Positions 1-49,122 of a DNA stretch of 64,000 nucleotides are shown in pieces. The notes under the pieces were generated by a model. That model worked only from the letters and a program-made list of their open reading frames with translations. It was not told where the DNA came from and did not search any database. Location of the stretch: positions 144,146 to 208,145 of the IMG/VR virus record IMGVR_UViG_3300020186_000013. One strand, written 5' to 3'. Within the stretch, counting starts at the first letter, position 1. Each line of letters starts with the position of its first letter. A program made the position numbers and the translations under genes.

Positions 1-1627
1 CTGCGTTCGTAAGTGGTAGTGCTTGAGTGAGCATCCGAGACGCCATAGCGACCCGTTGCCCTTTGACCATGCTCTTGAGCGGGACCATGTTGCCCAGGGG
101 CGAGAAGGCATTCTCAAAGTGGGGCAACTCGAATTGGACTTCGTTGCGTGGGACATATGCGATCTTGCCTCCCTTCATGACCGGGATACGTTTCGCGGTC
201 GACGCCAGTCCGCCGGGGAACGCGATCGCCGCCTCGGCCAGGTCCTGGGGGCTCTTCCAACCAAGCCTACCCGTCCTAACGTCCCGGAACTCGGAGTACA
301 TGCGACCGTCGCCGCCTTTTCGTGCCCCCCGAGCCATGTTCAGGTCGATGCCAACGCGGAAACTCTCGGGCGTCCGCAAGGGGTCCATGAACCCCATATG
401 ACCGGGCTGCACGCTCCGGGCGTCGTCGGGAACCGACTCCATCGACGGGATGCCGCCTTCACCCAGGCGGGTGATCCGGCTCTGCTTGTCGAACACCTCG
501 GCAGGGTTGATCTCTTCGATCGCCTGGCCCAGGCCAGAGCCCAGGAGCGTCTGCTCGATTTGCCGGGTCAGTGCCCCTGACGGCATGTCTTTCAGGTGTC
601 CCTTCATGCTCATCTTGTGAAACAGCATCTTCTGGACGCGACCGTGGTCGCGGGCCACCCGCTCGGAGATCAGGTCCTCGGGACCCAGCACGGTCTGGAA
701 GTGCGGGGCGTCCCGGTCGTCGACTTCGTCCTCGCCCCGACTGACGGCCAAGAGCTTCTTGGTTGCCGCCAGGATGGTGTCCTTATTCATCCGGGTGTGG
801 GGGTGTTTGAGCGTGTACTTGGTGACCTCGGGGTCGACCTCCATGTCCTCGAACTTCTTGACCAGGGCCAGGCGACGGTGCTGCTCGTCTGGGTTGTCCC
901 GGTCGACCTTACTCAGAATCTTGTTCTGGAGCTTGGTCAGTACCCCGCCCTCAGACTTGAGCATATTGCTCTGGTACAGCTCGGACCCCCAGTGCTCATA
1001 CAGCTCTCGGTCGGTCGTACCCATCGCCTTCAGGAGCGGCAGCAACGGCATCTCAGCTTGGCCGATCTTGATCTTGAACACGCCCTTGGCCGGATCGAGC
1101 AGGTAACGGTGGGAGACGCCCTTGCCGGGCAGGATGTTGGCGTGGGACTCCAGCTCACCGTTGTCCTTGCGACGGGTGAAGACACCGGGCATGAGCCGCT
1201 GCTGGTGGTTCAAAGTGTAATCGTTACCGCCGTGGACAAACGTGCCCATGTTCGTCAAGTGAGGGACGCGGGCGATAACCTGCTCACGGCGATCGACGAG
1301 AGCACCCGTGGCGTTGTCGGTCAACTCCCACGTGCCCTTCATGCGGCGGGCCAGGGTGCCGCCAGTCAGGAGGGCTTGCTTCCGTTGGTCGATACTGAAG
1401 TGGTCAGGGTCGATGTACTCCGGACTGTGGAGCCGGAGAGTGTGCCGGACGTTGGAAACCGGCTGAATGCCCTGAGCCGCCTTCAGGACGTTGCCGTAGA
1501 TGTTCTGCCGCGTCTTGACGTGGTCGCCAAAGTCGCGGATGTGGGACTCCGGAAGCACGGGCGGCGGTGGCGGCGTGCTGCCGGGCAGGAGGGACGGACC
1601 CTTATCGGGGATGAGACTGTCAGGCAT
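1..1627 (-). CDS. rpoB: Phage-encoded DNA-directed RNA polymerase beta-like subunit, N-terminal ~540 aa (runs off window start)
   Basis: Manually translated open minus frame from ATG 1627 (MPDSLIPDKG...) to base 1 with no stop. It contains RpoB-like blocks VPHLTNMGTFVHGGNDYTLNHQQRLMPGVF, INPAEVFDKQSRITRLGEGG...ARSVQPGHMGFMDPLRTPESFRVG and SPLGNMVPLKSMVKGQRVAMASRMLTQALPL. Confidence 0.9.
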   Translation of the reverse strand, partial: MPDSLIPDKGPSLLPGSTPPPPPVLPESHIRDFGDHVKTRQNIYGNVLKAAQGIQPVSNVRHTLRLHSPEYIDPDHFSIDQRKQALLTGGTLARRMKGTWELTDNATGALVDRREQVIARVPHLTNMGTFVHGGNDYTLNHQQRLMPGVFTRRKDNGELESHANILPGKGVSHRYLLDPAKGVFKIKIGQAEMPLLPLLKAMGTTDRELYEHWGSELYQSNMLKSEGGVLTKLQNKILSKVDRDNPDEQHRRLALVKKFEDMEVDPEVTKYTLKHPHTRMNKDTILAATKKLLAVSRGEDEVDDRDAPHFQTVLGPEDLISERVARDHGRVQKMLFHKMSMKGHLKDMPSGALTRQIEQTLLGSGLGQAIEEINPAEVFDKQSRITRLGEGGIPSMESVPDDARSVQPGHMGFMDPLRTPESFRVGIDLNMARGARKGGDGRMYSEFRDVRTGRLGWKSPQDLAEAAIAFPGGLASTAKRIPVMKGGKIAYVPRNEVQFELPHFENAFSPLGNMVPLKSMVKGQRVAMASRMLTQALPLTNA

Positions 1628-1645: not shown

Positions 1646-2743
1646 TTACGCGACCGGCTGTTGGTCCGCCGACGAGTGGGCGATCGGCTCCGGTGTGGCG
1701 AAGATCTCGGTCGGGGATTGGTTGAACTTGCGACGGTCGCGACGCTGGAGGGCCTTCTGCAAGACAGCCGAACGGCTTCGCTTCCGCATCTTGTCGTACA
1801 CGACGGCCCCAGTCAGCAGGCTCGACAGACCGGCGTACATGCCGTACCCGCCCATGGCCTGGCCGAGGACGTTAGAACTTCCCTGGCCGAGATAGTCGGA
1901 TAGAGCAGCCTGTTTCTCGACGAAAGCGTCATACAGCCGATCAAGGGCCTCGTCGAGGGCCTTCTTCTCGCCCCACTTGTGACCGCAAGAGTTGCACGCC
2001 CCGCTGTACGGGTCACCCTCCATGCTCGCACCGCATTTCGGGCAGTCCTCGCCCTTGAACGTGTGGTCGCCGGCAGACTTGGCCACGGCCTTGGGCTTGT
2101 CGTACTGCGATAGCAGAGCGTCGTGGAACTCCTGGCGGGCCGAATCGAGGGCCTGCTCGCGTTCCGTCTTGCGACGACTTTCCATCACCGCGTCGACGCC
2201 CTTCCAGCCGAGGCCCAGACCGCCAAGACCGCCGGCCAGCATCGACAGACCGTACCACGGGATGCCGCCCTTGGTCGTCGCGTCACCGCCGAGTAACCAC
2301 GGGACCGGGGTGGCCTCCTTGTCCATGGCTGCCTTCCTCTTCGGCACGTCCTCGTCTTCTTCCTCGGCCGGGATCGGCAGGGGCAGCATCGCCGACCCCG
2401 CCGTACTCCGTGCCCCGGCCATGTTCTGGCGAAGCATGTGGTGCAAGCCGACCGCCCCTCGGGCACCGGCCCCGACGCCGAGGCCGATCCCGAGGATCTT
2501 GCCGACGTCGCCCATCGCGGACTCCCGCAACGCCGTGTTCTTGGCCTCGCTTATGGCCTGGCTGATCACGAGCTGCTGGGGGGTCGGGGCCGAGCCAGTG
2601 AGCGAGTCCAAGGCCCCACGGCCCAGGTCGACGACGGGCTTGGCGGCGGCTCCGATGGCGTCGCCCACGGCCCCGAGGAAGCCCTCTTTTTGCATCTCCT
2701 CGCGGACCTTACTGAGCACCGACTGGCAGGTTAGGCTGTCCAT
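1646..2743 (-). CDS. Gly/Ala-rich K-x-A-motif protein with hydrophobic GxxxG helices and an inserted CxxC...CxxC Zn ribbon; putative virion internal protein
   Basis: 365-aa ORF; motifs MQKEG-FLGAVG, MDKEA, AKSAG, EKKA, EKQAA; glycine-zipper helices; CPKC...CNSC. Virion role is inference. Confidence 0.6.
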   Translation of the reverse strand: MDSLTCQSVLSKVREEMQKEGFLGAVGDAIGAAAKPVVDLGRGALDSLTGSAPTPQQLVISQAISEAKNTALRESAMGDVGKILGIGLGVGAGARGAVGLHHMLRQNMAGARSTAGSAMLPLPIPAEEEDEDVPKRKAAMDKEATPVPWLLGGDATTKGGIPWYGLSMLAGGLGGLGLGWKGVDAVMESRRKTEREQALDSARQEFHDALLSQYDKPKAVAKSAGDHTFKGEDCPKCGASMEGDPYSGACNSCGHKWGEKKALDEALDRLYDAFVEKQAALSDYLGQGSSNVLGQAMGGYGMYAGLSSLLTGAVVYDKMRKRSRSAVLQKALQRRDRRKFNQSPTEIFATPEPIAHSSADQQPVA

Positions 2744-3110
2744 TGACCAACTCCATTTGTCCGGCCGTCATGAACGGTGCCCGGTTACCGTCTTCCATGA
2801 AGTATTCGACCCACTCGACGTAGACCATTATCTGGGCGGCGTCGTACTGCCGCTTAATGTGGATGCACTGGAACCACCCGTTGGCGATCCCGTCGAGTAC
2901 CTCCAAATACTTCTTATTCTGGTCCGGGTCGGTCGTGTCGAAGTGACCGTTGTGAGGGTCGGCCACCTTGACGGTCTTGTCTTCCCACTCGTCTGAAGTA
3001 TACATCGGGGACGATTGGCCGCGAAACGGCATGCCGTCCTCGGTCGCCCGCCCCCAGTGCACCTTCTGGCCGTTGTGCTCCGTTCGGTTGCTGAACTTGA
3101 TCAGGCTCAT
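2709..3110 (-). CDS. Hypothetical protein (133 aa)
   Basis: ORF with coding-like codon usage in a continuous minus-strand run. Confidence 0.7.
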   Translation of the reverse strand: MSLIKFSNRTEHNGQKVHWGRATEDGMPFRGQSSPMYTSDEWEDKTVKVADPHNGHFDTTDPDQNKKYLEVLDGIANGWFQCIHIKRQYDAAQIMVYVEWVEYFMEDGNRAPFMTAGQMELVNGQPNLPVGAQ

Positions 3111-3119
3111 CTGACGTCC

Positions 3120-3512
3120 TTACAGGAACATCCGCCCGCCACGACTCTGCTTAGCCTGCTGCAACCGCCGAATCGCCTGCTGCCGGCGGACCTTGGCAGC
3201 TTCGGTACGGTAGGTGTCGATGACCTCGCGGTCCTTGATGTCGGCGACGTCCTTGTCGGTCACGTCCGTGGCCTTGGCCAAACCGGCCCCGGCGATGCCG
3301 CCCAGGATCGGCGGGGCGGCAAGGGCCAGAGGCACCCCGACGCTGCCGACGAGCTGCGTCAACGCCGTGGCGGCGTCACCGACGGCCCCGAACAACGCGA
3401 GCTTGTCCATCGCGGCCTTGACCGCCCCCGCCATTTGTTGGGCGGTCATCCCGTGCTCGACGCACCGGGCCACGAACCCGACCTTGAATGCTTCCCGTGC
3501 AGTCAGTGGCAT
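3120..3512 (-). CDS. Small K-x-A-motif protein with shared 'FVARC..HGMT.QQM..AV' leader and a glycine-rich hydrophobic helix
   Basis: AAGGAGG SD upstream; MPLTAREAFKVGFVARCVEHGMTAQQMAGAVKAAMDKLA-LFGAVG. Confidence 0.7.
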   Translation of the reverse strand: MPLTAREAFKVGFVARCVEHGMTAQQMAGAVKAAMDKLALFGAVGDAATALTQLVGSVGVPLALAAPPILGGIAGAGLAKATDVTDKDVADIKDREVIDTYRTEAAKVRRQQAIRRLQQAKQSRGGRMFL

Positions 3513-3560
3513 TTGGCCGTCCTCCTTGACAGCTAAGAAAAGGATCTCACCCCTGAATAG

Positions 3561-3758
3561 CTACCGGACCATCACGGGGCCGGCAGACACCGCACCGAAC
3601 AACACCAATCCCAGGATTAGCACGCAGAACCACGGGATCAGACAATAGACGCCAAAGTTCAGTCCGTTGAATGCGGCCCCTCGTGGTTCACGAAGCCTGC
3701 ACCCAGCAGGCAGCCAGAACATCATCAGTACGACCCAAATGATGACCCAAATCGTCAT
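3561..3758 (-). CDS. Small two-TM membrane protein
   Basis: AAGGA SD before ATG 3758; two hydrophobic stretches (IWVIIWVVLMMFW; CLIPWFCVLILGLVLFGAV). Confidence 0.65.
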   Translation of the reverse strand: MTIWVIIWVVLMMFWLPAGCRLREPRGAAFNGLNFGVYCLIPWFCVLILGLVLFGAVSAGPVMVR

Positions 3759-3781
3759 AGCGTTCCTTCGGAGCGGTAAGG

Positions 3782-4174
3782 TCACATGATCCCGTTTCCG
3801 CCGGAAACGCAGACCGTCGTCGGCTGCCGGCGACGGAGGTCGCGGCAGGCCGAAGCGTCGTCCGGCATGCCCTGCTCCTGGGCCTTCCGAGCGATGTACG
3901 CCGCTTTGTCGGTAATGTTCTGCATGTAGCTCTTGAGATCGGCGTCGGCACCACGACCGGGCGTGTCCGCCGAGTTACCAAGCATCTGGCTCAAGGCCAG
4001 CGTGTGCCGCAAGAACTCGCGAACGGACAGCGTCTCGTACGAGTTGTCGAGGGAGTCTTCGCAATGGATCAAGCCCCGGTCCGCCCAGAAGCGAACCGAG
4101 CGGTTGATGCCTTCCTTGGTCTTGCCCTGAATGATCAAGACGTCGTGACCGAAGGTGCCAATCTCGATGGTCAT
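3782..4174 (-). CDS. Hypothetical protein (130 aa)
   Basis: AGGAG SD; coding-like ORF. Confidence 0.7.
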   Translation of the reverse strand: MTIEIGTFGHDVLIIQGKTKEGINRSVRFWADRGLIHCEDSLDNSYETLSVREFLRHTLALSQMLGNSADTPGRGADADLKSYMQNITDKAAYIARKAQEQGMPDDASACRDLRRRQPTTVCVSGGNGIM

Positions 4175-4301
4175 CCCTGACTCCTAGAAACCAGAATCTA
4201 ACTCAGAACTCGCCCAGCAGGATCTTGCGACGGACGACCGGGTCGAGCGGCAGGAGTGCCAGACCGAACCCGGTGTCGATGATCTCGTAGTCCGCACCCC
4301 T

Positions 4302-4727
4302 TCAGTAGGGTGTGAACGTCGGCGTCGCGTCCGCCGTCGCGGACGGCTTGGCGACCAGCATGCCGGTCAGTGCATCATAAGCCTGGCCGATGATTGCCGG
4401 AAGGGCACGCTCGATGGCAGGCCCGATGAACGTGTTGAAGATGAACGGGTGGCCGATCGCCGTCGCCAGGTAGCTCTGGATCGACTGCTTGTAAAACGCC
4501 ATCGTTGCGTCGATGACGATTTGCCTTCGGTCCTCGGGCGACGCACCGACAACCTGCCCAGCCAAGTTGGTAACGGAACCGATGAACTTCGTCAGGATGC
4601 CGACCCAGTCGACAGCCGGAAGGACCGTCCCCGGTTCCGTCACGAACATGGGCACGGTGGAACCGTAGTGAATCAGAGCCTTGTCGATCTCGGGTTGCAA
4701 CTGCGTGTACAGCGGGGTCACCATCAT
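4302..4727 (-). CDS. Hypothetical protein (141 aa), amphipathic helical
   Basis: AGGAG SD before ATG 4727; the longer track ORF overlaps the upstream gene. Confidence 0.7.
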   Translation of the reverse strand: MMVTPLYTQLQPEIDKALIHYGSTVPMFVTEPGTVLPAVDWVGILTKFIGSVTNLAGQVVGASPEDRRQIVIDATMAFYKQSIQSYLATAIGHPFIFNTFIGPAIERALPAIIGQAYDALTGMLVAKPSATADATPTFTPY

Positions 4728-4735
4728 GGGATCTC

Positions 4736-5875
4736 CTAGTGAAACAGTTTCGGCACAACTGACCCGATGAGGCCGAGAGCGGCGACACCCTTGCCGATTT
4801 GGCTGAAGGTGTAGGGCGTGCCGACCACCTGGTTTAGCACCGCTCCGACCCAAGCCCCAGTAAGGTAATCTTTCCCCGCGTTCATTGCTAGTTGACCTAG
4901 CTGCCCGCCCGTGACGTGTCCGGGACTGCTCCGCTCGTCAGGCAGTTGCTGGGCCGCGTACATGGCCCCCATCGTCGTCGCGGCGAGGTCCGGTGACGCC
5001 CCCGACTCCCACAGCGTCTGACCGAGGGCGTTGATGTTGACGTCGTACGGCGTGCGGTGCCGATGGTCGCCGCCGCCGAACATGTCCCCGAACGCCCGCT
5101 TTACAAACGAGTCGCAAGCACCCTTGTAAGCATCGCCCACCTGTGGGGCGAGCAGGTGCTTGTTCGAGAACTCTTGGCTGTACTCTTCGGTCTGTGGGCG
5201 GCTGGTGCCGGCGAGTCGGCTTTCCAGGAGACTCGGCCGATCGAACTTAGGCGAGTCCGACAGCTGCTCGATCGGTGGGGTATCCAGCGGGTGCGGGTCG
5301 AGGAGGGAGTGGCCGGTCGCATGATTGGCGTACGCCCAGGCAGCACCGGGAGCCGCACCCGCCAGAGCACCGAGAATGGCTCCCGTCCGCTTCAATTTCT
5401 TGCCGTACTTGTGCGGCATTAACGCTTCAGCCAGAGAGCCAACACCATAACCAAGACCACCGCCCACCAATCCGGTCGTAAGCATCGCAGCCAAAGGACT
5501 CGGGGCGTTAGGGATTCCACCGGGGTAGGTTCCTGGGAAGAAGTTGAGGAGTTCACCGGCCCGCCGCAGCGTCTCGCTGTAGGCGACCTTGACCCAATCG
5601 CCACCCGTGGCCTCATCCCGAGTCAGGTAAGTCTCCCGCACGTGATCGGCACCGACCGCCCGCTCGGCGGCACGCTTACACCGCAGGGCATCAGGCCGAT
5701 GGAAGTCGATAGACGTACGCGGGAACAGGGCGACCTGATCGCGGTCCGGGCTATAGAAGTAATCGACGGGGTACTTGGTGAAGATCGACGCTGCCGCCTG
5801 CTTCACGTCCCAGCACGGTGCCGCCGTCTTCACGACCCAGGCATCCAGGCGGGGGATCACGTCTTCCCAATCCAT
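4736..5875 (-). CDS. Gly-zipper K-x-A-motif protein (putative virion internal protein)
   Basis: 379 aa; VKTAA, VKQAAA, VKRA-FGDMFGGG; TGLVGGGLGYGVG and GAILGALAGAAPGAAW helices. Confidence 0.65.
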   Translation of the reverse strand: MDWEDVIPRLDAWVVKTAAPCWDVKQAAASIFTKYPVDYFYSPDRDQVALFPRTSIDFHRPDALRCKRAAERAVGADHVRETYLTRDEATGGDWVKVAYSETLRRAGELLNFFPGTYPGGIPNAPSPLAAMLTTGLVGGGLGYGVGSLAEALMPHKYGKKLKRTGAILGALAGAAPGAAWAYANHATGHSLLDPHPLDTPPIEQLSDSPKFDRPSLLESRLAGTSRPQTEEYSQEFSNKHLLAPQVGDAYKGACDSFVKRAFGDMFGGGDHRHRTPYDVNINALGQTLWESGASPDLAATTMGAMYAAQQLPDERSSPGHVTGGQLGQLAMNAGKDYLTGAWVGAVLNQVVGTPYTFSQIGKGVAALGLIGSVVPKLFH

Positions 5876-5958: not shown

Positions 5959-8286
5959 CTACAGCTCACACTTGTCCCCGCTGCACGCATACGTCCGAGA
6001 ACCCGTGGTGGTGTCGACCTCCTCGTACCGTGGCAGCTTCGCCCAGTCGATGACCGGGAACTTCGCAGCCAGCTCGTTGTACTGCTCCTCGGTGACCACC
6101 TCGTTGGGAGCCGCCTTGTAGCTGCCGTTGTCCCACGGCAGGAAGGAGATGCCCGTAATCTCGTCGAAGTGCTCCCACACCCACGTGCCAACCGCAGGCC
6201 ACTCATGGTCCTTGACGTAGATCGTCACCGAGCAAGAGTGATCCGCCCAGTGCCGTTTCCACAGCAACCAGTTCTCCAGCTGCTGCATGGCCGTCACGTC
6301 TTCGCGGAGGGTGCAGCCCTCGGGGTTCTTCTTGATCCACGAGAACGCGACCAGGGACGGGTCTTCGGGGGCCACCTCCCACGGCACGCCCGACTCCTTG
6401 AGGAACTTGCACATCGGGGTGTGCATCGACTCGCGGGTCCGACGGATCTGGTGGCGACCGAACCGTGGCGACAGACCCGAGCCGCAGTCGAAGAACACGG
6501 CCGAGTCGCCGCTGGGCTTCACGGTGGTGTCGGCTGCCGACCGGTTGATGCCGAACCGTTTGGCCAGCATCTCGTTCGTCTCGGTCACGATCTGCTTGAG
6601 GGCCGTCAGCAGTTCCTCGCGACCGGGAGCACCCGGCTGGAGCAGCGGACAGTCCGCGTGGCCGGTGATGTCGACGCCGAGCAGCCGCTCCTCGTCGCAG
6701 TTCTTCTTCCAGTCCTTGCGGATGTACTGGAAGTTGGTGCAGCACGACTGGAGGGTGCCGAAGTAGGTCGCCGCCCGCACCTTCTCCATCAGCGTTTCCT
6801 TCGTGTCCTCCCGGCGGGCAACGGCGATCGAGAGGTTGCAGAACTGGAACGGCCGGAGCACGATTTCCGCACACGGGTTGCATCCGAACTTCCAGTTCTT
6901 GCGGCGGGCCGGGCGGTGTTTGCGGCACGCCTCGCGGTTGAAGATGCCCCGCTCCCCGGACTTCGACTTCACGAGGGCCAGCCACTCGTCCATGAAGTCC
7001 TCGACCGGGGGCTTCTCGTTGTACGCGGCCGAGTTGTTGGCCATCGACAGGAAATCCCGATCACGCCACCACTCGCCATGCTTGGCGTGCCGCATGTTGC
7101 GGCTGTTCAGGTCGGAGATGGAGATGCAGGACGCACGCCGTACGCCGCCCACCTGGACGATCTTGCCGATCATGCAGCAGATGCAGTGGACATCGTAATC
7201 CGACAGGCGGCGACCCTGAGCCGCCAAGATGACGCCACGCACGAACGTCAGGAGCTGGACGAGGGATTCCGGACCTGACGCCCGCCCACCCTTGGTAATC
7301 AGGCGTGTGCCCGCCTTCCGCACGTCGTTCGTGTCGAACTCCACGTCCTCGCCCGAGAACCACTTTGTGATCCCGAACAGCAAGGCGTCGCACCACCCCT
7401 CGGTGGAATCCTTGACCTTGTACTTGTACTTCTTGGCGTGCTTGCCCTTCCCCTGCCGCTTGACGCGGGGGAGATCGTCAACGTAGTCGGTCTCGACCGA
7501 GAAGCCGCCGCCGGTGCCCTGCATGAGGATGTAGAGCAACTCGGCAAACGAGAAGAGATCCTTGATCGGGTGGTAGGCACAGTTGTAGGCACCGACGTGG
7601 CACCGTTCGAGGGCAGGACCGGCCATCTGCACGACACGCATCGCGGGGCTGGACTTCAGCTCGAACATCATCTTGCGGAGCCAGACGACCTCCTCGGACT
7701 TGAGGTGGCCGAACTGCGGGATGGTGCCGAACCAGTCGAAGACGCGGTTGTTGCACTCTTGCCACGTCTCGCGGCGGTTGTCCTTCTCACGCCACCGGGA
7801 GAACTTGGAAAGGAACTGGTAATACTGGAGCGGGCTGGGGAAGTGCTGGGCGTCTTCGGTGATCGCCTCAGTAACGTGGGCCGGGATCGGCCGTTCCTCG
7901 CGAGTCTTACGACGCTCCTCGCGGTAAAGCGTGTAGTGCTCGGCAGCTTCGGCCAAGCCGTCCGCCCACAACTGAGTAATGACGGCCCGCTGCACCTCTT
8001 CGATCGTCATCGCCGACACGCTCTGGGCGGCGAAGTAATTCACGACTCTGACGGTGACGGCCTCGACCGTGTCGTGCGAGTCGTCAGGCGTGACGTTGAG
8101 TCCGTTTTGAAAGCAGCGGGTGACGGCGTGGCGAATCTTGGTACAGTCGAACGGCTCGGTGCGGCCGTCGCGTTTGGTGACCTTCCAGTCCTGGGACAAA
8201 ACTTCCGGGGTGAGCGTCTTGCCGTTAGCGTCCTGACGGCTCTGGTAATTACGACGCGACGACGCACTTGCAACGCCATGACTCAT
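5959..8286 (-). CDS. nrdJ: Class II (adenosylcobalamin-dependent) ribonucleotide reductase with N-terminal ATP cone
   Basis: VTKRDGRTEPFDCTKIRHAV ATP cone; GGVRRASCIS, GCNPCAEIVLRPFQFCNLS, TTVKPSG; C-terminal ACSGDKCEL CxxxxC; GGAGG SD before ATG 8286. Confidence 0.95.
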   Translation of the reverse strand: MSHGVASASSRRNYQSRQDANGKTLTPEVLSQDWKVTKRDGRTEPFDCTKIRHAVTRCFQNGLNVTPDDSHDTVEAVTVRVVNYFAAQSVSAMTIEEVQRAVITQLWADGLAEAAEHYTLYREERRKTREERPIPAHVTEAITEDAQHFPSPLQYYQFLSKFSRWREKDNRRETWQECNNRVFDWFGTIPQFGHLKSEEVVWLRKMMFELKSSPAMRVVQMAGPALERCHVGAYNCAYHPIKDLFSFAELLYILMQGTGGGFSVETDYVDDLPRVKRQGKGKHAKKYKYKVKDSTEGWCDALLFGITKWFSGEDVEFDTNDVRKAGTRLITKGGRASGPESLVQLLTFVRGVILAAQGRRLSDYDVHCICCMIGKIVQVGGVRRASCISISDLNSRNMRHAKHGEWWRDRDFLSMANNSAAYNEKPPVEDFMDEWLALVKSKSGERGIFNREACRKHRPARRKNWKFGCNPCAEIVLRPFQFCNLSIAVARREDTKETLMEKVRAATYFGTLQSCCTNFQYIRKDWKKNCDEERLLGVDITGHADCPLLQPGAPGREELLTALKQIVTETNEMLAKRFGINRSAADTTVKPSGDSAVFFDCGSGLSPRFGRHQIRRTRESMHTPMCKFLKESGVPWEVAPEDPSLVAFSWIKKNPEGCTLREDVTAMQQLENWLLWKRHWADHSCSVTIYVKDHEWPAVGTWVWEHFDEITGISFLPWDNGSYKAAPNEVVTEEQYNELAAKFPVIDWAKLPRYEEVDTTTGSRTYACSGDKCEL

Positions 8287-8385
8287 GGCATCTTCCTCCG
8301 ACAAATTGGGGATGGGAACAAAACACCAGTGCCGACCTGTCCCGCGATTCCTTCCGGACAGACCTACCGCACCCGCATCCTCGAC

Positions 8386-29743: not shown

Positions 29744-29752
29744 GATGATCTC

Positions 29753-30157: not shown

Positions 30158-30208
30158 GTTGTTCCTCCAGGGGTGACAGGTGGGCAGAGAAAAGGATACT
30201 CAACCCGG

Positions 30209-33866: not shown

Positions 33867-33885
33867 GTCTCACTCCGTTGAGGGT

Positions 33886-34500: not shown

Positions 34501-34513
34501 TGGCGGTCCTCCG

Positions 34514-34981: not shown

Positions 34982-34990
34982 GGTGTGGTC

Positions 34991-36517: not shown

Positions 36518-36551
36518 GCTGTTGTCCACGTTCGCCTCCTTGCGAGTTAGA

Positions 36552-41656: not shown

Positions 41657-44600
41657 TTAGGAGTGGCCCTCGCCCGTCAGACCCTGAGCGGCTTGACGGG
41701 CTTTGTTAGTCTGGTGATGGAGTTCATCGCGTGCGGGTGCTTGACCGCCAGTGAGCTTGTTCCAAGCGTCGGAGATGGCTCCGGGGTTCTGCTGGATGCG
41801 GGGATAAGCCGCCAAGCCCGCACCACCCGCCATTATCAGCGGGTTACCAGTCAGCATCCCGAGCCCGCCGAGACCCATACCGCCCAACGCCATTCCCCGC
41901 TGCCCGCCCGTCATGTTCTCGGTGTCGTACCCCAGAGCTTTCAAGAACGGGTTACCGACGTTACCCACCCGCTGGCCGATCTGGTACCGGATCTCCTGGG
42001 TCGGGTCGAACTGGCCCTCCTCGTTGAGGAAGCCACGCTCGTGCATGTACTTGTCCGCGTCCCGTGCTATGTTCGCCTGCAACGTCGGGTAGTCCTGCTC
42101 GATGAAGGTCTTCTTCAGGTCGTTGATCTTGTTGTCGACGTCGCCGGCGACCTGGTCATGCAGAGAACCATAGGCCGTTCCGCCCAAAGCAGCAGCCCCC
42201 GTCCCGAGCGTCAACCCCTGCCCCGCCCGGAAGCCGAGCTTCCTGGCCCCGGACAAACCGGCGGCACCGCTCTGGTATGCACCTTTGCCCCACAGGAAGT
42301 GCCCGGCACGACTAAACGGGTCCATGACGCCCTGACCCATCCGCGTCATCGCGTTCGACGGAGCCTCCAGGGCGGTCGTGACACCCCGACTCAGCATGCT
42401 AGGTTCCACGGGCGTCGTCCCCGCCGCTCGTGCCGCTGCGTTCGTCCGAACCAAAGACGAGTTGCGTGCAGCAGCGACGTTGCCCCCCAGGCCAGTCATC
42501 AAACCGGCTCGACTCAGGCGACGGCTCCACTTCTCAGGGTCGTTCGGGTCACCGTTACCTGTCATGTCGCCGAGCTGGTCCATGCCGAACCCGATATTGG
42601 TCCCGGCAAACGACTGAGCCAACGGACGCCACAGCGTCTGACCCGTCGCCGAGTTGCGGAATCCTCGGTTGCCCATCAACGCACCGCCGGCAATGCCCAG
42701 CGGATTGATCCTCCAACTTCGCCAGCCGCCCTCGGGTTGGCCAGTGGCCGGGTCAATCCCCGGACTACCAAGGGTGAAACTACCCTCCCCGCCGCCCATC
42801 GCGTTGGCCGTCATGTTGCCTTGCAAGCCACCGAAGGTCATCTGCATGCCACTACCGGACATGTTCGCCCGCGTTCGACCGGCGGCAGTCGCCGCACGGG
42901 GGAGCGTGGCAGCCTCGGTGATGTTGAGACCCGAGTTGTCTTTACCGTGTGTTGCCGGACGCGGAGACACGATCTTCGGACCCATACCCGGCGTCGGAGC
43001 ACCCCGTGTGCCGGTCCGCATCAAGGGCTTGGTCGACGACGCACCAGGACGGACCAGTCCGCCCAGCCACTTCGCACCCGACACCAGGGTCTCCTTGCTG
43101 GGCCAGACGGCGTCCTTCTCGAACGCCTGCTTCTGCCCGAACATGCTGCCTAGGCCCTGGGCCATCTGCTGCCCGCCCATCATCGACCAACCCGACGGGG
43201 CGTACTGCGACGCCAGCTGCTGAGCCGACCCGGCAGCCTGCTCATTGGCCACCTCGGACGTTGCCTTCATCGACTTCGGACCGGTGATGGACATCGGCGG
43301 CGGGGCCAGCGACGCCGCCCCGGTATTCTTGTTGACGCTGACCTCACCCATCCCCTGCGGGTGTGTCGCCTGAGCCACCTGGGTCTTCTGACTCACCTGA
43401 TTCTTGCCCGTCGGCAGCGTACCGGGGGACGGAGCGGTCGGTGCGGTCTTGGGCTTCTCCTGCTTGCCGCCCACCATCTTGTCGAAGCTGTCGAGGAACG
43501 CGAGCTTCTTGAGGCCGGCAGCAAGCTCAGCGTGCACCTGAAGGCCGTAGTTGGTCCCGACCCGGTCCACGGCGGACTTGATCTGCGACAGACCGAGGCC
43601 CTTCTGACGACAGTGGTCAAAGAACGACTCGGCGAACGGCGTCATGTCCATGCCGCCTTTGTCGAACCCAGGTAGTCGCGGCCCGGTGTACGGGACCGGA
43701 GGAACAGGTTGTTGCTGCCCGAAGTTGGCAGGCAGACGCGACCCGGTGTACGGGACCGGAGGAACAGGTTGTTGCTGCCCGAAGTTGGCAGGCAGACGCG
43801 ACCCGGTATACGCCGGCACAACGTGCTGTGGCACCGGCTTAGCCTGGGGCATCGGCTGGGCCTGCGGTTGTGGCTGGGCCTGCGGTTGTGGCTGCTGGGC
43901 GGCGTTGGTGACCGGTGCCGCTAACTGCGGAGCAATGTTGCCGACGACGCCAGCCGTTTCAGATGGAGGGGCTTGCGTGGGATCGGCCAGAGCGTTCTGA
44001 ATTTGGCTAGAAAGTTGCCCGCCCAGGGTGAACTTGTTGACGTATCCGAGCCCACGGTATAAGGGGTACTTCTCTTCGTTCTGCTGAGCGTTGTACGCGG
44101 CATTGCCGATCGCGTACGGCAATTTGTTGCTCACATCATCAATGTTGGTCGGGTTCGACTTCGCCAGGGCCATCGCCCCACCAGCCCCCAAAAGTCCAGC
44201 ACCGGTAACACCCGCAGCCTGGGTCACTCCACCCATGGTCTTGTCGAAGCCCTTGAGACCATACCCGACAGCCTGTTGCCCTCGACCGAGAACGGCCCGC
44301 CCGCCACCCTGAGCCACGTTCGCGGCACCACGGGTAAGCATGCTGTTCTGGATCGGCTGAGTGAACGGCCGAGTCAGGGGCGTCGACAGGGTGTTCTTTA
44401 CGGTCTTGACGGCCTGCACAAGCGGGTGAGCCAAGCGGTTGGTGTCGAGAGCGTGGACGCCTCGGCTCAACATCGACACACCAGGGACGCCATCCATCAT
44501 GCCCGGCAACTGGTGGGTCTGGGCCAACTGCTCCTTGGTCGCCCCCGCCGCAACCCGAGACTGCATATCGGCCCGGTTCATGAGAGGCTTGACAGTCCGG

Positions 44601-46924
44601 GAGTCGAACAGCTTGGTGCCTTGGAGCTTGCCGCCCTGGCCGTAGCCGCCCATGGTCTTGGCAAACCCGGCTGCCCCGCGTCCCATTAAGCCGCCAACAC
44701 CACGAACAAGGGCACCAAAGTACGCTCGTTTCTCAAGGTCCTTCCGCTGACAGTGGTCGAAGAACGCTTTAGCGGCTGGAGTCATATCACTTCCCCCCTT
44801 GGCGAGTCCCGGCACTGTCGGCACGTGTGGTCGGATGAACCCAGGAACTTCCTGTCGGGCCGCGTCCTGTTGCTGTTGAAGCCGCTGCACCGCCCCTTGG
44901 CGAGCGTCGTCGATCGCCTTGTTGCCTGCTTGCTGCACGGAGTCGGCAGTCTCGTTGCCTACCTGTCGAGCGGAATTGGCCCACGCCTGCCCGCTCGTCG
45001 TGCGACCTAGCATTTGGTTGATGATCACCTGCTTGGCCACGGACTGCTTGGCCGCTTCTTGTTGCTGCCGAATACGCTGCATCGCTTCCTGCCGAGCAGT
45101 GTCGAGAGCCTCGCCACCCGCCTGCTGTGCGGACGAGGCCAGCGTCTGTACGCTCTTCTGAGCTATCCTCCCCTGTTCCTGGGCCATCAGCCGAGACGCC
45201 TCCTGGGCCGACATCCCTCCGCTCACCCTCTGAGCCCACGCCTTCGCAGCCGGGTGCGACATAGCCCCAGCAGCTTCCGGCGACTCGGCCACAGCCTTGA
45301 GGTTGAATTTCGGCTGAGCCGCAGCCAAACGAGGGTACAGGTTGGCTGCGGCGGTCATCTTGGCCGCGTCTTGCGGCGACTTCCAGGTCGACCAATTCAG
45401 CATGTCGGACACGGCGGGCACGTCGAGGGCACCCTGCACCCTGTTGCTTTTCATCGCAGCAGCCACCAGCGGCTCAGCCCTGGCGGCGTTGTTGTCCCCG
45501 ATCGCGTTGCCGAGGTGCGTGCGAACCGAGCGGTTCTGGAGCTCCTGCAACGCCTCGGGCGGGTAGTATTCGTGGCCGGTCCTCGTCGGCAGGCCGTGCT
45601 CATGGAACTGATTCTTCGAGAACGTCTGCGATCGGGCGATCGGGCTAACAGCCCGGAGCAGCCGCTGGCCCGTCGGGCTGTTGACGTTGGCCTCATAGTT
45701 CTGCTGGAGGGCTGGCAGCCGCTTGCGGACTTCCTCCTCCATGATCTGCTCGGTCGGGGCCGGCGTATAGTCGGCAAGGTTGCGGATCACCCCCTGCATG
45801 ATGTTGCCGCCCGCCGTGAAGTTGCCGATCCGCTTCATCACGTTGTTGACCGGGTTCTCGTTCGCCTGCACCATGCTGTTGTGGGCGGCGTTGCCGACGG
45901 TATACGGGAAGTTCCGCTTCCCCGCAGCCCGACCAACCTCGGCAATGTCGGACTTGTCCGTCAAGCTGTCCCATATCGCGGGGAGCGGATTGTCCCGTAA
46001 CTTGGCAATCTCGCCGTTCGGGTCCACCGTGTTGTACGGGTCAACGGCTCTCGTGAACCTCTGGAGGTTGTTAGCCGGGGCGTGCCACAAGGCATTCACC
46101 CCGCTGCCGAGGGCCACGCCCGCACCACCGAAGCCGACGATCTTGGTCGCAGCCCCGAGAGCCTTGTCGGCCCCCATGAGACCGTACCCGCCCGCCTGCT
46201 GTGCCCGACCCAGGATCGCCTTGCCTCCACCCTGGGCCACGTTCGTAGCACCACGGGCGAGCAGATTGTTCTGGATCGGGGTCGTGAGTGGGCGAGTTAA
46301 GGGCGTACCCAGCAGGTTCTTGGTCACGTTGGCCGCGTGCATGAACGGGTGCGTGAACCGGTTGCGGTCGAGGTAATTGAGAGCCTTGTTGGTCACCCCA
46401 ACACCAGGGATGCGGGACCAATTGCCTGGTAGCTCATGGGTCGCAGCGAGTTGCTCGCGAGTCTGCCCCGCCGCCAAGCGGGCGTTCATCCCCGGTCGAC
46501 GCAGGAACGGCTTCACCGTCGTCGAGTTGAACATGGTCTCGCCACGGAGGTTGCCCCCCTGACCAAAACCAGCGAGGTCCCGCACGTACGCCTTGCCGCC
46601 GTGGACCTGGGCGTCGCCCACGGCCTTCGCACCCGACCGGGCCACCTGGTTGACCTTGTCCGCCGCCTGGAAGGGTGCCTTCACCACGGCCTTGGTGCCC
46701 TGCCCGAACATCCGGGCCGCAGGACGGCCAATGCCGTTGAACAGGCCCACAGCACCACGGCCAAGGGCACCGAAGACGGCCTCCTTCTCCAGCCCCTCAT
46801 TCAGCTCGGCGTACACCTGCTCGCCGAAACGAAGGCCCACGCCGTCAACAGCCTCTTTGATCTGTTGCGGCGTGAGTCCCTTGTCACGGCAGCGGGCGAA
46901 GAATGCCTCGGCAAACGGCGTCAT
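41657..46924 (-). CDS. 1756-aa modular Gly/Ala/Gln-rich K-x-A polyprotein (putative virion internal/ejection protein)
   Basis: GAGG SD before ATG 46924; three MTP-leader modules; internal duplication of ~200 aa; many GxxxG helices. Confidence 0.75.
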   Translation of the reverse strand: MTPFAEAFFARCRDKGLTPQQIKEAVDGVGLRFGEQVYAELNEGLEKEAVFGALGRGAVGLFNGIGRPAARMFGQGTKAVVKAPFQAADKVNQVARSGAKAVGDAQVHGGKAYVRDLAGFGQGGNLRGETMFNSTTVKPFLRRPGMNARLAAGQTREQLAATHELPGNWSRIPGVGVTNKALNYLDRNRFTHPFMHAANVTKNLLGTPLTRPLTTPIQNNLLARGATNVAQGGGKAILGRAQQAGGYGLMGADKALGAATKIVGFGGAGVALGSGVNALWHAPANNLQRFTRAVDPYNTVDPNGEIAKLRDNPLPAIWDSLTDKSDIAEVGRAAGKRNFPYTVGNAAHNSMVQANENPVNNVMKRIGNFTAGGNIMQGVIRNLADYTPAPTEQIMEEEVRKRLPALQQNYEANVNSPTGQRLLRAVSPIARSQTFSKNQFHEHGLPTRTGHEYYPPEALQELQNRSVRTHLGNAIGDNNAARAEPLVAAAMKSNRVQGALDVPAVSDMLNWSTWKSPQDAAKMTAAANLYPRLAAAQPKFNLKAVAESPEAAGAMSHPAAKAWAQRVSGGMSAQEASRLMAQEQGRIAQKSVQTLASSAQQAGGEALDTARQEAMQRIRQQQEAAKQSVAKQVIINQMLGRTTSGQAWANSARQVGNETADSVQQAGNKAIDDARQGAVQRLQQQQDAARQEVPGFIRPHVPTVPGLAKGGSDMTPAAKAFFDHCQRKDLEKRAYFGALVRGVGGLMGRGAAGFAKTMGGYGQGGKLQGTKLFDSRTVKPLMNRADMQSRVAAGATKEQLAQTHQLPGMMDGVPGVSMLSRGVHALDTNRLAHPLVQAVKTVKNTLSTPLTRPFTQPIQNSMLTRGAANVAQGGGRAVLGRGQQAVGYGLKGFDKTMGGVTQAAGVTGAGLLGAGGAMALAKSNPTNIDDVSNKLPYAIGNAAYNAQQNEEKYPLYRGLGYVNKFTLGGQLSSQIQNALADPTQAPPSETAGVVGNIAPQLAAPVTNAAQQPQPQAQPQPQAQPMPQAKPVPQHVVPAYTGSRLPANFGQQQPVPPVPYTGSRLPANFGQQQPVPPVPYTGPRLPGFDKGGMDMTPFAESFFDHCRQKGLGLSQIKSAVDRVGTNYGLQVHAELAAGLKKLAFLDSFDKMVGGKQEKPKTAPTAPSPGTLPTGKNQVSQKTQVAQATHPQGMGEVSVNKNTGAASLAPPPMSITGPKSMKATSEVANEQAAGSAQQLASQYAPSGWSMMGGQQMAQGLGSMFGQKQAFEKDAVWPSKETLVSGAKWLGGLVRPGASSTKPLMRTGTRGAPTPGMGPKIVSPRPATHGKDNSGLNITEAATLPRAATAAGRTRANMSGSGMQMTFGGLQGNMTANAMGGGEGSFTLGSPGIDPATGQPEGGWRSWRINPLGIAGGALMGNRGFRNSATGQTLWRPLAQSFAGTNIGFGMDQLGDMTGNGDPNDPEKWSRRLSRAGLMTGLGGNVAAARNSSLVRTNAAARAAGTTPVEPSMLSRGVTTALEAPSNAMTRMGQGVMDPFSRAGHFLWGKGAYQSGAAGLSGARKLGFRAGQGLTLGTGAAALGGTAYGSLHDQVAGDVDNKINDLKKTFIEQDYPTLQANIARDADKYMHERGFLNEEGQFDPTQEIRYQIGQRVGNVGNPFLKALGYDTENMTGGQRGMALGGMGLGGLGMLTGNPLIMAGGAGLAAYPRIQQNPGAISDAWNKLTGGQAPARDELHHQTNKARQAAQGLTGEGHS
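43682..43812. repeat. In-frame 60-bp tandem repeat (two identical copies plus a partial) encoding YTGSRLPANFGQQQPVPPVP
   Basis: Lines 43681 and 43741 are identical after their first base. Confidence 0.95.
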
Positions 46925-46932
46925 GTCCGTCC

Positions 46933-49122
46933 TCACGCAAGTCGACTGAGTATCGCACCCTCGGCGATGAAGTTGGCGATGTCGAGGTCAACGGCGTCCT
47001 TCTCGGCCACGGGAGGGTCGTACGCGGCCTCGTCGGCACGGCGTCGCTTGGCGTCTATGGTCTTCTTGAACAGGCCCTCGTCGCCGCCGCAGGCGTACCA
47101 GTCGTCCATCCCCTCCTTGGAATGGAGGCCGTGCATCCCGCCCGCCATGATCCCGGCGGCACCCATGGTCGTGTCACGGTTGAGATCGTTGTTCACCACA
47201 GAGTCTGCGAGGTAGTCGTGCCTGTTGGCCCCCTTGGGAGACCGCCGCATGATCTCCTCCAGGTCCTCGTTGTTGGCCTTGCGGCTCAGGTACGCCAACG
47301 CACCCGTGATGCCCGCACCACCGAGACCGCCGATGGCTGCTCCCGTGCCGCCGCCAAGGTGAGCACCCAGGGCCGCACCGCCGAGACCGCCGAGGATGCC
47401 GGCACCAACGCCCTGCTTGGCCGGGGAGGCCATCATCTCGGGAATGGGCGTGGCATAGCTCTGGAAGATCTTGGGCAGCAGCCGGGACTTACCCTGGTCG
47501 ATCTGAGCCGTCTCGTCGGCGTCGAACTCCCGTGCGGACTTGTGCCGGCCCTTGAACGGGTTCGGCTCCTCCTTGGGCTTCTTCTTCAGGTAGTCGCCCA
47601 CTGAGGCCCACGCCTCCTGGCCCTGCATGTAGTGGTCGGGCTTGTGCTGGTACGACAGGTGCGTCCCCTCGCCCGTCGCCGTCACGGCCTTGCCCTTGTT
47701 GTCTTGGGCTGCGGACTTGAGCAGGAGCACGATCGCCCGGATGTCGAAGCTCCGCTTGTTAATCTCGTTGGCAGCGACGTCCTTGACGCCGGCCTGCTTG
47801 AGGATACCGGCCTCCTTGAGCAGCTGCCGGATCACGGTCACCCGGTCGGACGCCTGCTTCTTCTTGGCCAGGTGCTCTTCGACCTCACGGTCAGACTTCT
47901 CATCGGCCGACTCCATCTTGTCGCCAATGACAGGAGTCGCAGCGTGGTAACCCGCCACACCGCCGAGCCCGCCACCGGCAAGGCTGCCGAGGAACGTCGC
48001 AAGCGGCCCGCCACCCATGTGGTGCGACAGCAGGGCACCCGACGCTGAACCAAGACCAACACCGGCACCCGTGGAGATGCCACGGGCAGCACCGCGTGCG
48101 GCACCCATCGCCATCCGGCCCTTGGCGTGGCCGTAGCCTGCCCCGGCCACGCCACCGATACCGGCACCCTGCAATGCACCGCTGATGCCCGATCCCGCCG
48201 CGTAGCCGAGGGCCGCACCCAGGGGCATCTCGGCCTGCTTGTCTAGAATCTGGCTTTTAGATCCGCCGTCGGACGCCTCGGCCATCATGCCCATTCCCAT
48301 GCTGTCGTTCTTCAGGTCCTCCCGAGCGGCAGCCTGACCGACCGGACGACGGTTCTTCATGTTGAGCAGCCGCATCACGCCGTGGCGGATGTTCTGGCGG
48401 CGGTGCACCGGCGGCGGTGGCGGCGGGTCCTGCGGCGAGGTGCCAGGAACCGGCTGTCCGGGAGGCGGCTGGCCCGGTGCCACCGGCTGTCCGGGCATCG
48501 GGGGAGGCGGCATCGGTGGTTGGCCGGGGGGAGCACCCGGAGGGGGAGCCATGCCCGGAGGAGCACCCGGAGGGGGAGCCATGCCCGGAGGAGCACCCGG
48601 AGGGGGAGCCATGCCCGGAGGAGCACCAGGCGGCGGACCGGCCATCGGAGGACCAGCTGGAGGCGGTGCCAGGCCCGCAGCCTTTTTACTAAAAGCGGAT
48701 TTCTCGGCGAAAAGGGGTCGCCCGGTGTCGAGGGCCGTCCCAGGGTTCGTCGCCGTGGGTGGGTTAGGTCGGAGCGTGCGTACATTCCGGCTCTTGGCCT
48801 TGGAAGAACGCACCGGTCCCCCGTTGGGAACCGACTGAGCGGCCTTCATCTGACCCACAATCCGGGCCACCGCATCCCGAATGCCCTTTCCTGCCGCCCC
48901 GCTCGCCTGCTTCTGGGCCTGCTGGGCCGCAGCCTGAATGCCGCCGACCGTTGCGTTCGGTTGGGGGCGTGCGGCGATAGACTTGATGGGGTTGTTCTGG
49001 GCAGGCTTGCCCGCACCGGAGAGCATCTTGCTCAGGCCCATGCCCGGAAGACCGCCCATTCCCGACTGCTGCCCGCCGAGGACGATAGGACTCGGCTGAG
49101 CACCAAGAGCTTGCTTGTTCAC
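46933..49122 (-). CDS. 729-aa low-complexity K-x-A-motif protein with Pro-rich repeats and glycine zippers
   Basis: GGAGG SD before GTG; about a dozen K-x-A sites by eye (NKQA, QKQA, EKSA, KKAA, DKQA, KKQA, LKEA, LKQA, LKSA, HKSA, EKDA). Confidence 0.75.
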   Translation of the reverse strand: MNKQALGAQPSPIVLGGQQSGMGGLPGMGLSKMLSGAGKPAQNNPIKSIAARPQPNATVGGIQAAAQQAQKQASGAAGKGIRDAVARIVGQMKAAQSVPNGGPVRSSKAKSRNVRTLRPNPPTATNPGTALDTGRPLFAEKSAFSKKAAGLAPPPAGPPMAGPPPGAPPGMAPPPGAPPGMAPPPGAPPGMAPPPGAPPGQPPMPPPPMPGQPVAPGQPPPGQPVPGTSPQDPPPPPPVHRRQNIRHGVMRLLNMKNRRPVGQAAAREDLKNDSMGMGMMAEASDGGSKSQILDKQAEMPLGAALGYAAGSGISGALQGAGIGGVAGAGYGHAKGRMAMGAARGAARGISTGAGVGLGSASGALLSHHMGGGPLATFLGSLAGGGLGGVAGYHAATPVIGDKMESADEKSDREVEEHLAKKKQASDRVTVIRQLLKEAGILKQAGVKDVAANEINKRSFDIRAIVLLLKSAAQDNKGKAVTATGEGTHLSYQHKPDHYMQGQEAWASVGDYLKKKPKEEPNPFKGRHKSAREFDADETAQIDQGKSRLLPKIFQSYATPIPEMMASPAKQGVGAGILGGLGGAALGAHLGGGTGAAIGGLGGAGITGALAYLSRKANNEDLEEIMRRSPKGANRHDYLADSVVNNDLNRDTTMGAAGIMAGGMHGLHSKEGMDDWYACGGDEGLFKKTIDAKRRRADEAAYDPPVAEKDAVDLDIANFIAEGAILSRLA
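48531..48630. repeat. In-frame 30-bp tandem repeat x3 (GAPPGMAPPP)
   Basis: agggggagccatgcccggaggagcacccgg repeated. Confidence 0.95.

What the first reader, a model, noticed from the sequence alone, without database searches (positions are those of the whole stretch)
3120..3512. Shared Cys-containing leader domain links a 130-aa gene to the giant protein 38 kb away
Seen: FVARCVEHGMTAQQMAGAV...DKLA (3120) aligns with FFARCRDKGLTPQQIKEAV...EKEA and FFDHCRQKGLGLSQIKSAV...KKLA (41657). The pattern is F-x-x-(R/H)-C-x-x-x-G-x-(T/G)-x-x-Q-x-x-x-A-V, always ending at a K-x-A site. Inference: a reusable targeting or pro-peptide, such as a head-packaging signal, removed on maturation.
Basis: partly seen in the sequence, partly recalled or inferred. 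Interest (0 to 1): 0.65.

Follow-up and report, generated by a model that had tools for sequence, protein, structure and literature searches.

The report
Single-cysteine helical domain reused in jumbo-phage proteins
A 130-residue membrane protein and a 1,755-residue modular protein of an uncultured jumbo phage share a small, previously undescribed helical domain built around one invariant cysteine; the domain is widespread in related phages, but nothing shows that it is a cleaved packaging signal.

Summary
The N-terminus of the 130-aa gene (3120-3512, minus strand) is homologous to three segments of the giant ORF (41657-46936, minus strand), one of them truncated. Profile-profile P is 7e-8 to 7e-10, and shuffled controls score far lower. 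It is a folded domain of two or three helices with the motif F-x3-F-x3-C-x3-G-L-[ST]. No Pfam, PHROG or NCBIfam model covers it. It was found in 561 protein clusters. Most are orthologues of the small protein, a core gene always sitting three genes upstream of the phage RNA polymerase. The domain also occurs in 1-3 copies in large Gly/Pro-rich proteins. The domain cysteine is the only cysteine in these proteins: 3 of 3 in the 1,759-residue giant. Most copies are followed by a Gly-rich hydrophobic segment. Internal, tandem and C-terminal copies exist, and no prohead protease was found, so the cleaved-leader reading is unproven. The giant looks like three cistrons fused in frame. Each internal copy starts at an ATG preceded by a strong Shine-Dalgarno-like site. 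My best guess is a docking or cross-linking module for membrane-active, probably virion-associated proteins.

The parts
3120..3512 (-). Small gene, 130 aa (P0002): N-terminal domain, Gly-rich linker, one hydrophobic helix, acidic stretch, basic C-terminal helix
   Evidence: ORF with GC3 0.85 and an AAGGAGG Shine-Dalgarno site. 19 homologues. AF2 helices 5-19, 24-55, 68-81 and 97-124 at low confidence.
3393..3512 (-). Domain copy in the small protein (aa 1-40). F9, F13, C17 and G21 are invariant or nearly so.
3270..3353 (-). Hydrophobic Gly/Ala/Pro-rich segment of the small protein (aa 54-81, PLALAAPPILGG...)
   Evidence: Kyte-Doolittle 19-mer up to 1.65. Invariant A66, P67, P68, G71 and G75.
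41657..46924 (-). Giant gene, 1,755 aa from the ATG. Module A is aa 5-717, module B aa 718-1097, module C aa 1098-1759 (P0001 numbering).
   Evidence: Independent contigs from four other samples reproduce it with a few SNPs and no frame-breaking indel.
46775..46924 (-). Domain copy 1 (aa 5-54), three-helix form, at the true N-terminus
   Evidence: AF2 pLDDT 80, helices 3-15, 19-33 and 35-54.
44723..44785 (-). Domain copy 2 (aa 718-738), truncated. Helix 1 with the Cys is kept and joins directly to LEKRA-YFGAL.
43496..43645 (-). Domain copy 3 (aa 1098-1147), three-helix form, heading module C
   Evidence: 61% identity to copy 1 over 51 aa
44786..44805 (-). In-frame junction before copy 2: AAGGGGGG-N7-ATG, translated as KGGSD-M
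   Evidence: Best anti-SD pairing of all 61 in-frame ATGs in the ORF, -11.0 kcal/mol
43646..43665 (-). In-frame junction before copy 3: AAAGGCGG-N7-ATG, translated as KGGMD-M. The relative P0021 has AAGGGAGG at this place.
   Evidence: Fourth best of 61 ATGs, -7.1 kcal/mol
43669..43812 (.). 60-nt tandem repeat, 2.4 copies, encoding VPPVPYTGSRLPANFGQQQP at the end of module B. Copy number varies between samples.
   Evidence: TRF. A contig in run X5 lacks one in-frame unit, and other assemblies break here.
46933..49122 (-). Upstream 729-aa Pro/Gly-rich gene. Its homologue is fused in one ORF to the domain plus module C in relative G001.
1646..5875 (-). Conserved cluster around the small gene: 379-aa Gly-zipper protein, 130-aa, small gene, 133-aa, 365-aa, then RNA polymerase beta
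   Evidence: The small gene, its two flanking genes and RNA polymerase keep this order in all six jumbo-phage records; the 365-aa and 379-aa genes matched in three of five relatives. Two distant contigs have the same layout by gene size and order.

Best explanation
The shared segment is a small autonomous helical domain, not a peptide tag. It has two helices in the small-protein subfamily and three in the large-protein subfamily. Its motif is F-x3-F-x3-C-x3-G-L-[ST]-P-x-[QE].

I propose that it stays on the mature proteins. There it would act as a homotypic or common-partner docking and cross-linking module, with its solitary invariant cysteine as the working residue, for example through a disulfide or a metal bridge. 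It would tie together membrane-active Gly-zipper proteins of this phage clade: the core 130-aa single-pass protein encoded beside the RNA polymerase genes, and the modular giant protein encoded in the portal-side structural region.

The giant gene looks like three cistrons fused in frame. Each module keeps its own Shine-Dalgarno-like site, ATG and domain. Internal initiation could therefore yield nested products that each begin with the domain.

Shown here: the homology, the family size and architectures, the predicted fold, the sole-cysteine pattern, the following hydrophobic segment, the synteny, and the Shine-Dalgarno-like junctions. Inferred: the docking or cross-linking function, the virion or ejection association, and use of the internal starts.
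For: - Homology.
- Family size: 561 clusters at 50% identity. 163 of 178 scored copies are N-terminal, and 8 proteins carry 2-3 copies.
- Fold: three helices, pLDDT 80.
- Conservation: C in 148 of 150 sequences, G in 148, F in 145 and 148.
- Sole cysteine: the domain cysteines are the only cysteines in P0001 (3 in 1,759 aa, against a proteome frequency of 1.45%), P0021, P0133, P0167, P0147 and P0146. 133 of 159 small members have exactly one Cys.
- Hydrophobic follow-on: 142 of 177 copies are followed within 70 aa by a Gly/Ala-rich hydrophobic 19-mer, against 14 of 114 control windows.
- Internal, tandem and C-terminal copies exist.
- Junction ATGs rank 1st and 4th of 61 for anti-SD pairing. 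The relative's junction is AAGGGAGG.
- The small gene keeps its place beside RNA polymerase in 8 contexts.
- The homologous RNA polymerase beta subunit is the protein with the most spectra in virions of phage Arash (PMC10585845).
- The portal lies on the same strand, about 14 kb upstream of the giant.
Against: - There is no direct evidence of binding. The complex prediction of giant leader with small N-domain gave no verdict (score 0.00).
- The fold search found only generic helical bundles.
- Cysteine scarcity is partly expected in low-complexity Gly/Ala/Gln/Pro-rich proteins.
- F, F and C lie at i, i+4 and i+8, so the Cys could simply be a core-packing residue.
- Most counted copies are orthologues, so the statistics on what follows the domain are not independent.
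- Virion association rests on a relative with about 30% identity that lacks the domain.
- G002 and G003 have the small protein but no large protein with the domain.
Confidence: 0.4

Rival explanations
1. Cleavable N-terminal propeptide or capsid-targeting signal. The domain directs the proteins into the prohead and is removed at the K-x-A/G site by a maturation protease.
For: - 163 of 178 copies are N-terminal.
- The boundary motif E-K-x-[GA] is fairly conserved.
- T4 internal proteins offer an analogy: diverse proteins share only a capsid targeting sequence (PMC3012670).
- The giant lies in the portal-side region.
- If the giant is a polyprotein or uses internal starts, every copy could be N-terminal.
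Against: - C-terminal, tandem and Met-less internal copies exist.
- At 35-55 folded residues it is much larger than the short shared capsid targeting sequence of T4 internal proteins.
- It is the most conserved part of a 130-aa core protein.
- No S77 or S78 protease was detected.
- K-x-A is not universal.
Confidence: 0.17
2. Mainly an evolutionary footprint. The domain is the ancestral N-terminal cap of a family of Gly-zipper membrane proteins. The giant arose by tandem duplication and loss of stop codons. The domain has a local structural role next to the hydrophobic segment and no shared partner or targeting role.
For: - Modules A and B are paralogues (33% identity, E 5e-57).
- Junctions look like former intergenic Shine-Dalgarno-ATG regions.
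- Module composition differs between relatives: P0021 has A+C, while G001 has the upstream gene fused to domain plus C.
- Copy 2 is truncated yet the ORF is maintained.
Against: - The sole cysteine is conserved at 99%.
- The domain recurs in otherwise unrelated large proteins and at C-termini. Both facts point to a function of the domain itself.
Confidence: 0.25
3. A nucleic-acid-binding helix-turn-helix or TALE-like hairpin that tethers these proteins to the packaged DNA.
For: The profile matches the TALE repeat junction C-x3-G-L-T-P-x-Q-[VI], summing to 30 bits (E 4e-6) over eight repeats. The positions of G, L, [ST] and [IV] resemble a classical helix-turn-helix turn (my own knowledge).
Against: - Each TALE repeat contributes only 2.5-6 bits on a 12-mer, and no single stretch passes.
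- A proteasome beta subunit matches the same capping motif.
- The giant's copies are net acidic, as the sequence shows directly.
- No Pfam helix-turn-helix, SAP or HeH family was hit.
Confidence: 0.06
4. Chance resemblance of short helical segments.
For: Single-sequence phmmer does not connect the two proteins.
Against: Reciprocal profile hits, hhalign P down to 7e-10, shuffled controls, and intermediate sequences such as the G004 564-aa ORF.
Confidence: 0.01

Closest known systems
Capsid targeting sequence (CTS) of phage T4 internal proteins
   Same: A shared N-terminal element on otherwise unrelated proteins of one phage. T4's diverse internal proteins have only a conserved CTS, which encapsidates them into the scaffolding core (PMC3012670).
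   Different: The T4 CTS is a short peptide removed by the prohead protease (my own knowledge). Here the element is a 35-55-residue folded helical domain with an invariant Cys. It also occurs internally, in tandem and at C-termini. No protease was found and no packaging was shown.
Processed ejection and inner-body protein paralogues of giant phages (phiKZ, SPN3US)
   Same: A jumbo phage with its own multisubunit RNA polymerase and large proteins of unknown function near the head genes. SPN3US-type heads carry a mass of ejection proteins, and several head proteins are cut by the prohead protease (abstracts of PMC5694885 and PMC7411985).
   Different: No sequence relation was found, no T4-like protease was detected, and the boundary motif K-x-A/G is not the Glu-based site of those proteases (my own knowledge).
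In-frame nested genes with internal initiation (lambda C/Nu3, T7 gene 4A/4B)
   Same: One ORF with internal Shine-Dalgarno-ATG sites that could give products sharing a C-terminus (my own knowledge of those systems; the sites here are).
   Different: Use of the internal starts is not shown here. They may be relics of gene fusion.
TALE repeat junction and generic helix-capping hairpins (HTH, SAP, HeH)
   Same: The local motif C-x3-G-L-T-P-x-Q-[VI] at a helix-turn-helix junction.
   Different: Only a 12-residue match. There is no repeat array, no RVD loop, no family-level score, and the F-x3-F half is unmatched.

Membership tests
T4-type capsid targeting sequence or cleaved propeptide | Strictly N-terminal position on the precursor | tested here: not met
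   Internal, tandem and C-terminal copies exist in P0096, P0133, P0147, P0149, P0167, G001 and G004, although 163 of 178 copies are N-terminal.
T4-type capsid targeting sequence or cleaved propeptide | Removal by a prohead protease at a conserved site | not testable with these tools
   No S77 or S78 protease was detected. K-x-[AG] is only moderately conserved. Virion proteomics is needed.
T4-type capsid targeting sequence or cleaved propeptide | Carrier proteins are packaged in the head | not testable with these tools
   There is no cultured relative with the domain.
TALE or TALE-like repeat proteins | Tandem array of 33-35-residue repeats matching over the full repeat length | tested here: not met
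   Only a 12-15-residue match per repeat at 2.5-6 bits, and 1-3 dispersed copies per protein.
Any curated protein family (Pfam, PHROGs, NCBIfam) | Score above the family threshold | tested here: not met
   Searches gave no hit over the domain.
Tape measure or tail-associated protein (considered for the giant) | Family match, or a position between tail chaperones and the distal tail protein | tested here: inconclusive
   Only weak Gly-rich matches to phrog_1047 for the upstream gene and P0096. A marginal DUF2460 hit lies three genes downstream. No other tail genes were recognised.

The most novel reading that the evidence does not exclude
The domain is a new class of single-cysteine, redox- or metal-dependent homotypic connector. 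It would cross-link a set of injected, membrane-inserting proteins of jumbo phages that package their RNA polymerase. The small core protein would act as the membrane anchor, and the multi-copy giant proteins as the scaffold of an ejection conduit or early-infection compartment.
Probability: 0.12. Interest if true: 0.7.

Novelty: new variant of a known kind. Interest (0 to 1): 0.45.

Why it matters
Large uncultured phages are full of giant low-complexity proteins that no method can name. This domain gives a handle on some of them. It is a compact, easily recognised module found in 561 clusters, and it links such giants to a small core gene that always travels with the phage RNA polymerase genes. 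The single conserved cysteine offers a clear mutational test. If the domain mediates assembly or cross-linking of injected membrane proteins, it would help explain how these phages deliver their polymerase and DNA. If it is only a fusion footprint, it still documents how giant phage genes grow: by in-frame fusion of tandem paralogues that keep their ribosome-binding sites.

Tried and rejected
- Family scans of the small protein, the giant, their neighbours and diverse family members against Pfam, PHROGs and NCBIfam gave nothing over the domain.
- tblastn of P0002 and P0147 against 50,697 phage records gave no match.
- Phage Arash, the nearest cultured relative by RNA polymerase, lacks the domain.
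- Single-protein pattern scans of viral contigs failed. Only a six-sequence alignment worked.
- The word-index search found just one homologue of the giant. A second search with module C added only P0170, a gene call cut short at a contig break in the tandem repeat.
- The ESM Atlas gave no lead.
- Foldseek against the PDB found nothing. VIA-align gave only generic helical bundles with Z up to 6.2.
- Complex prediction with the giant leader and the small N-domain gave no verdict (score 0.00). This is not evidence either way.
- The AF2 model of the whole small protein has low confidence (pLDDT 57).
- The TALE similarity was rejected as evidence of homology.
- S77 and S78 prohead proteases were not found.
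- A lipobox reading of L-A-R-C was rejected by eye. There is no signal peptide, and Arg sits at position -1.
- The GTG start at 46936 was rejected in favour of the ATG at 46924.
- A scan of prokaryote genomes found only two MAG contigs, so no host could be named.

Full report
**Source.** The window is the last 64 kb of a 208,145-bp IMG/VR virus record with 62.5% G+C, estimated 93% complete by CheckV. Near-identical sequence occurs in six or seven microbial-mat metagenomes. The closest cultured phages by the RNA polymerase beta subunit are Vibrio phage D69 and Salmonella phage Arash, at about 30% identity. This is therefore an uncultured jumbo-phage lineage.

**The observation.**
- The minus-strand ORF at 3120-3512 encodes a 130-aa protein, P0002.
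- The minus-strand ORF at 41657-46936 encodes 1,759 codons, P0001.
- The true start of the giant is the ATG at 46924. It lies 8 nt after the TGA of the upstream gene and follows a GAGGA site. A relative is called the same way.
- The giant holds three copies of the motif: aa 5-54, aa 1098-1147, and a truncated copy at aa 718-738.

**Significance of the similarity.** The similarity is too weak for single-sequence phmmer. Every profile test confirms it:
- An HMM of the two full giant copies ranks the small protein first among the phage's other proteins (E 1.1e-3).
- An HMM made only from 19 small-protein homologues finds the giant as the first non-orthologue in six genomes (E 1.6e-4).
- hhalign gives 94.6-96.5% probability and P 7e-8 to 7e-10. 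One hundred column-shuffled controls reached at most 19, against 37-47 observed.
- A 564-aa ORF in relative G004 carries an intermediate sequence that both profiles hit.

**What the element is.** The alignment of 150 copies shows F, F, C and G conserved in 145-148 of 150 sequences. The consensus is R-E-A-F-K-V-G-F-L-A-R-C-A-E-E-G-L-T-P-E-Q-I...V-K-x-A.
- AlphaFold2 with this alignment predicts three helices for the giant's copy (3-15, 19-33, 35-54; pLDDT 80).
- The small-protein subfamily lacks the roughly 15-residue third-helix insertion. It is modelled as a two-helix hairpin that runs on into the linker, at low confidence.
- Structure searches return only generic helical bundles.
- No Pfam, PHROG or NCBIfam model covers it.
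- A PDB profile search hits TALE repeats, but only through the 12-mer C-x3-G-L-T-P-x-Q-[VI], at 2.5-6 bits per repeat. A proteasome subunit matches the same capping motif. I treat this as local resemblance, not homology.

**Distribution.** The domain profile finds 561 clusters at 50% identity with E up to 1e-3 among 1.84 billion representatives.
- Most hits are proteins of 120-150 aa with the domain at residue 1-3.
- Ten of the best 150 are longer and instructive:
  - P0096, P0133 and P0149 have two copies.
  - P0147 has three copies in 266 aa, including one at the C-terminal end.
  - P0167 has one copy at each end of 1,071 aa.
- Of 178 scored copies, 163 are N-terminal, 14 internal and 1 C-terminal. 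Two apparent internal copies (P0145, P0155) probably reflect miscalled starts.
- Within the six related genomes, each has the small protein. Only G000, G001 and G004 also have a large protein with the domain.
- Cultured phages lack it. Only two MAG contigs among 185,579 species genomes carry it.

**Two further regularities.**
- The domain cysteine is essentially the only cysteine in these proteins.
  - The giant has 3 in 1,759 residues, all in the domain copies, against a proteome frequency of 1.45%.
  - In P0021, P0133 and P0167, both cysteines lie in domain copies.
  - P0147 has three cysteines, one in each of its three copies.
  - 133 of 159 small members have exactly one cysteine.
- 142 of 177 copies are followed within 70 residues (median 18) by a hydrophobic 19-mer rich in Gly and Ala. 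Only 14 of 114 control windows show this. These counts are dominated by orthologues.

**Context of the small gene.** It lies in a tight co-directional cluster: 379-aa Gly-zipper protein, 130-aa, small gene, 133-aa, 365-aa, then RNA polymerase beta. The small gene, its two flanking genes and RNA polymerase keep this order in all six genomes. The 365-aa and 379-aa genes matched in three of the five relatives. Two distant contigs show the same layout by gene size and order. In Arash, the homologous polymerase subunit is the protein with the most spectra in purified virions (PMC10585845). This hints, but does not show, that the cluster is virion-related.

**Context and build of the giant.**
- It lies about 14 kb downstream of the portal gene (61061-63010; E 1e-60 to the Arash portal), on the same strand. 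An Ig-like virion protein and a marginal DUF2460 protein follow it.
- Modules A and B are paralogues (33% identity, E 5e-57). Module C shares only the domain with them.
- The relative P0021 has modules A and C only.
- In G001 the homologue of the upstream 729-aa gene is fused to the domain plus module C. In G002 it is fused without a recognisable domain.

**The junctions.** Each internal copy begins at an ATG preceded by a Shine-Dalgarno-like run: AAGGGGGG before copy 2, AAAGGCGG before copy 3, and AAGGGAGG in the relative. These runs translate as K-G-G-x-D-M. Among the 61 in-frame ATGs of the ORF, the two junction ATGs rank first and fourth for predicted anti-SD pairing. Both are stronger than the median annotated start. 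The giant thus looks like an in-frame fusion of three cistrons, and internal initiation could still give nested products. Contigs from four other samples confirm the sequence. The only length variant is one in-frame unit of a 60-nt tandem repeat just before copy 3.

**Interpretation.** The reusable-module idea is right. The cleaved-leader idea is untested and sits poorly with several facts: the non-N-terminal copies, the size and fold of the domain, its conservation within a 130-aa core protein, and the lack of a recognisable prohead protease.

My preferred model is a retained docking or cross-linking domain whose single cysteine is functional. It would join membrane-active, probably virion-associated proteins. 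This is an inference. The one complex prediction gave no verdict.

The main rival is that the domain is chiefly a footprint of duplication and fusion, with a local structural role. Propeptide and DNA-binding readings remain possible at lower odds.

Noticed in passing
window 56280-58061 (-): A 593-aa protein with a tubulin/FtsZ GTPase-domain match (PF00091, 42.7 bits against a cut-off of 33; Tubulin_2, 27.2 bits). It may be a PhuZ-like phage tubulin in a phage that also encodes its own multisubunit RNA polymerase.
   Followed up: no
window 61061-63010 (-): Portal protein: 25% identity and E 1e-60 to the Arash portal gp204. PHROGs and Pfam both missed it.
   Followed up: partly
window 2-1627 (-), running on beyond the window start: RNA polymerase beta-like subunit (Rpb2 domains 2 and 3), 1,038 aa in the full record, followed upstream by a 582-aa piece. 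In relatives the gene is fused or interrupted. L064 has an intein (Intein_splicing, LAGLIDADG) in a 1,889-aa beta/beta' fusion, and G004 has a 2,511-codon ORF.
   Followed up: partly
window 5959-8304 (-): A B12-dependent (class II) ribonucleotide reductase with an ATP-cone lies next to the conserved small-gene cluster.
   Followed up: no
window 43669-43812: A 60-nt tandem repeat (2.4 copies, 95% match) inside the giant gene varies between samples; one contig has one unit fewer, in frame. It breaks most short-read assemblies, which explains the truncated 606-aa gene call P0170.
   Followed up: yes
window 48523-48677: A 30-nt repeat, about five copies, encodes PPGAPPGMAP in the 729-aa gene upstream of the giant.
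   Followed up: no
window 1646-2743 (-): A 365-aa conserved neighbour carries Gly-rich hydrophobic stretches and a zinc-ribbon-like CPKC...CNSC motif. It also has an FLGAVGDA stretch resembling the LFGAVGDA that follows the domain in the small protein.
   Followed up: no
window 41297-41644 and 39992-41269 (-): The 115-aa protein and the very high-GC3 425-aa protein just downstream of the giant both match phrog_21918. The 425-aa protein also matches head-decoration, virion-structural and tail-fibre PHROGs, which suggests Ig-like modules.
   Followed up: no
window 28805-36529 (-): A run of sugar-metabolism genes (UDP-glucose dehydrogenase-like, two glycosyltransferase-like) and a sporulation-protein-like gene lies inside the phage.
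   Followed up: no
L066 and L067 (MAG contigs): The only prokaryote-genome hits for the small protein are contigs binned into a Nanopelagicales MAG and a Nannocystaceae MAG. They are probably phage contigs, and no host could be inferred.
   Followed up: no
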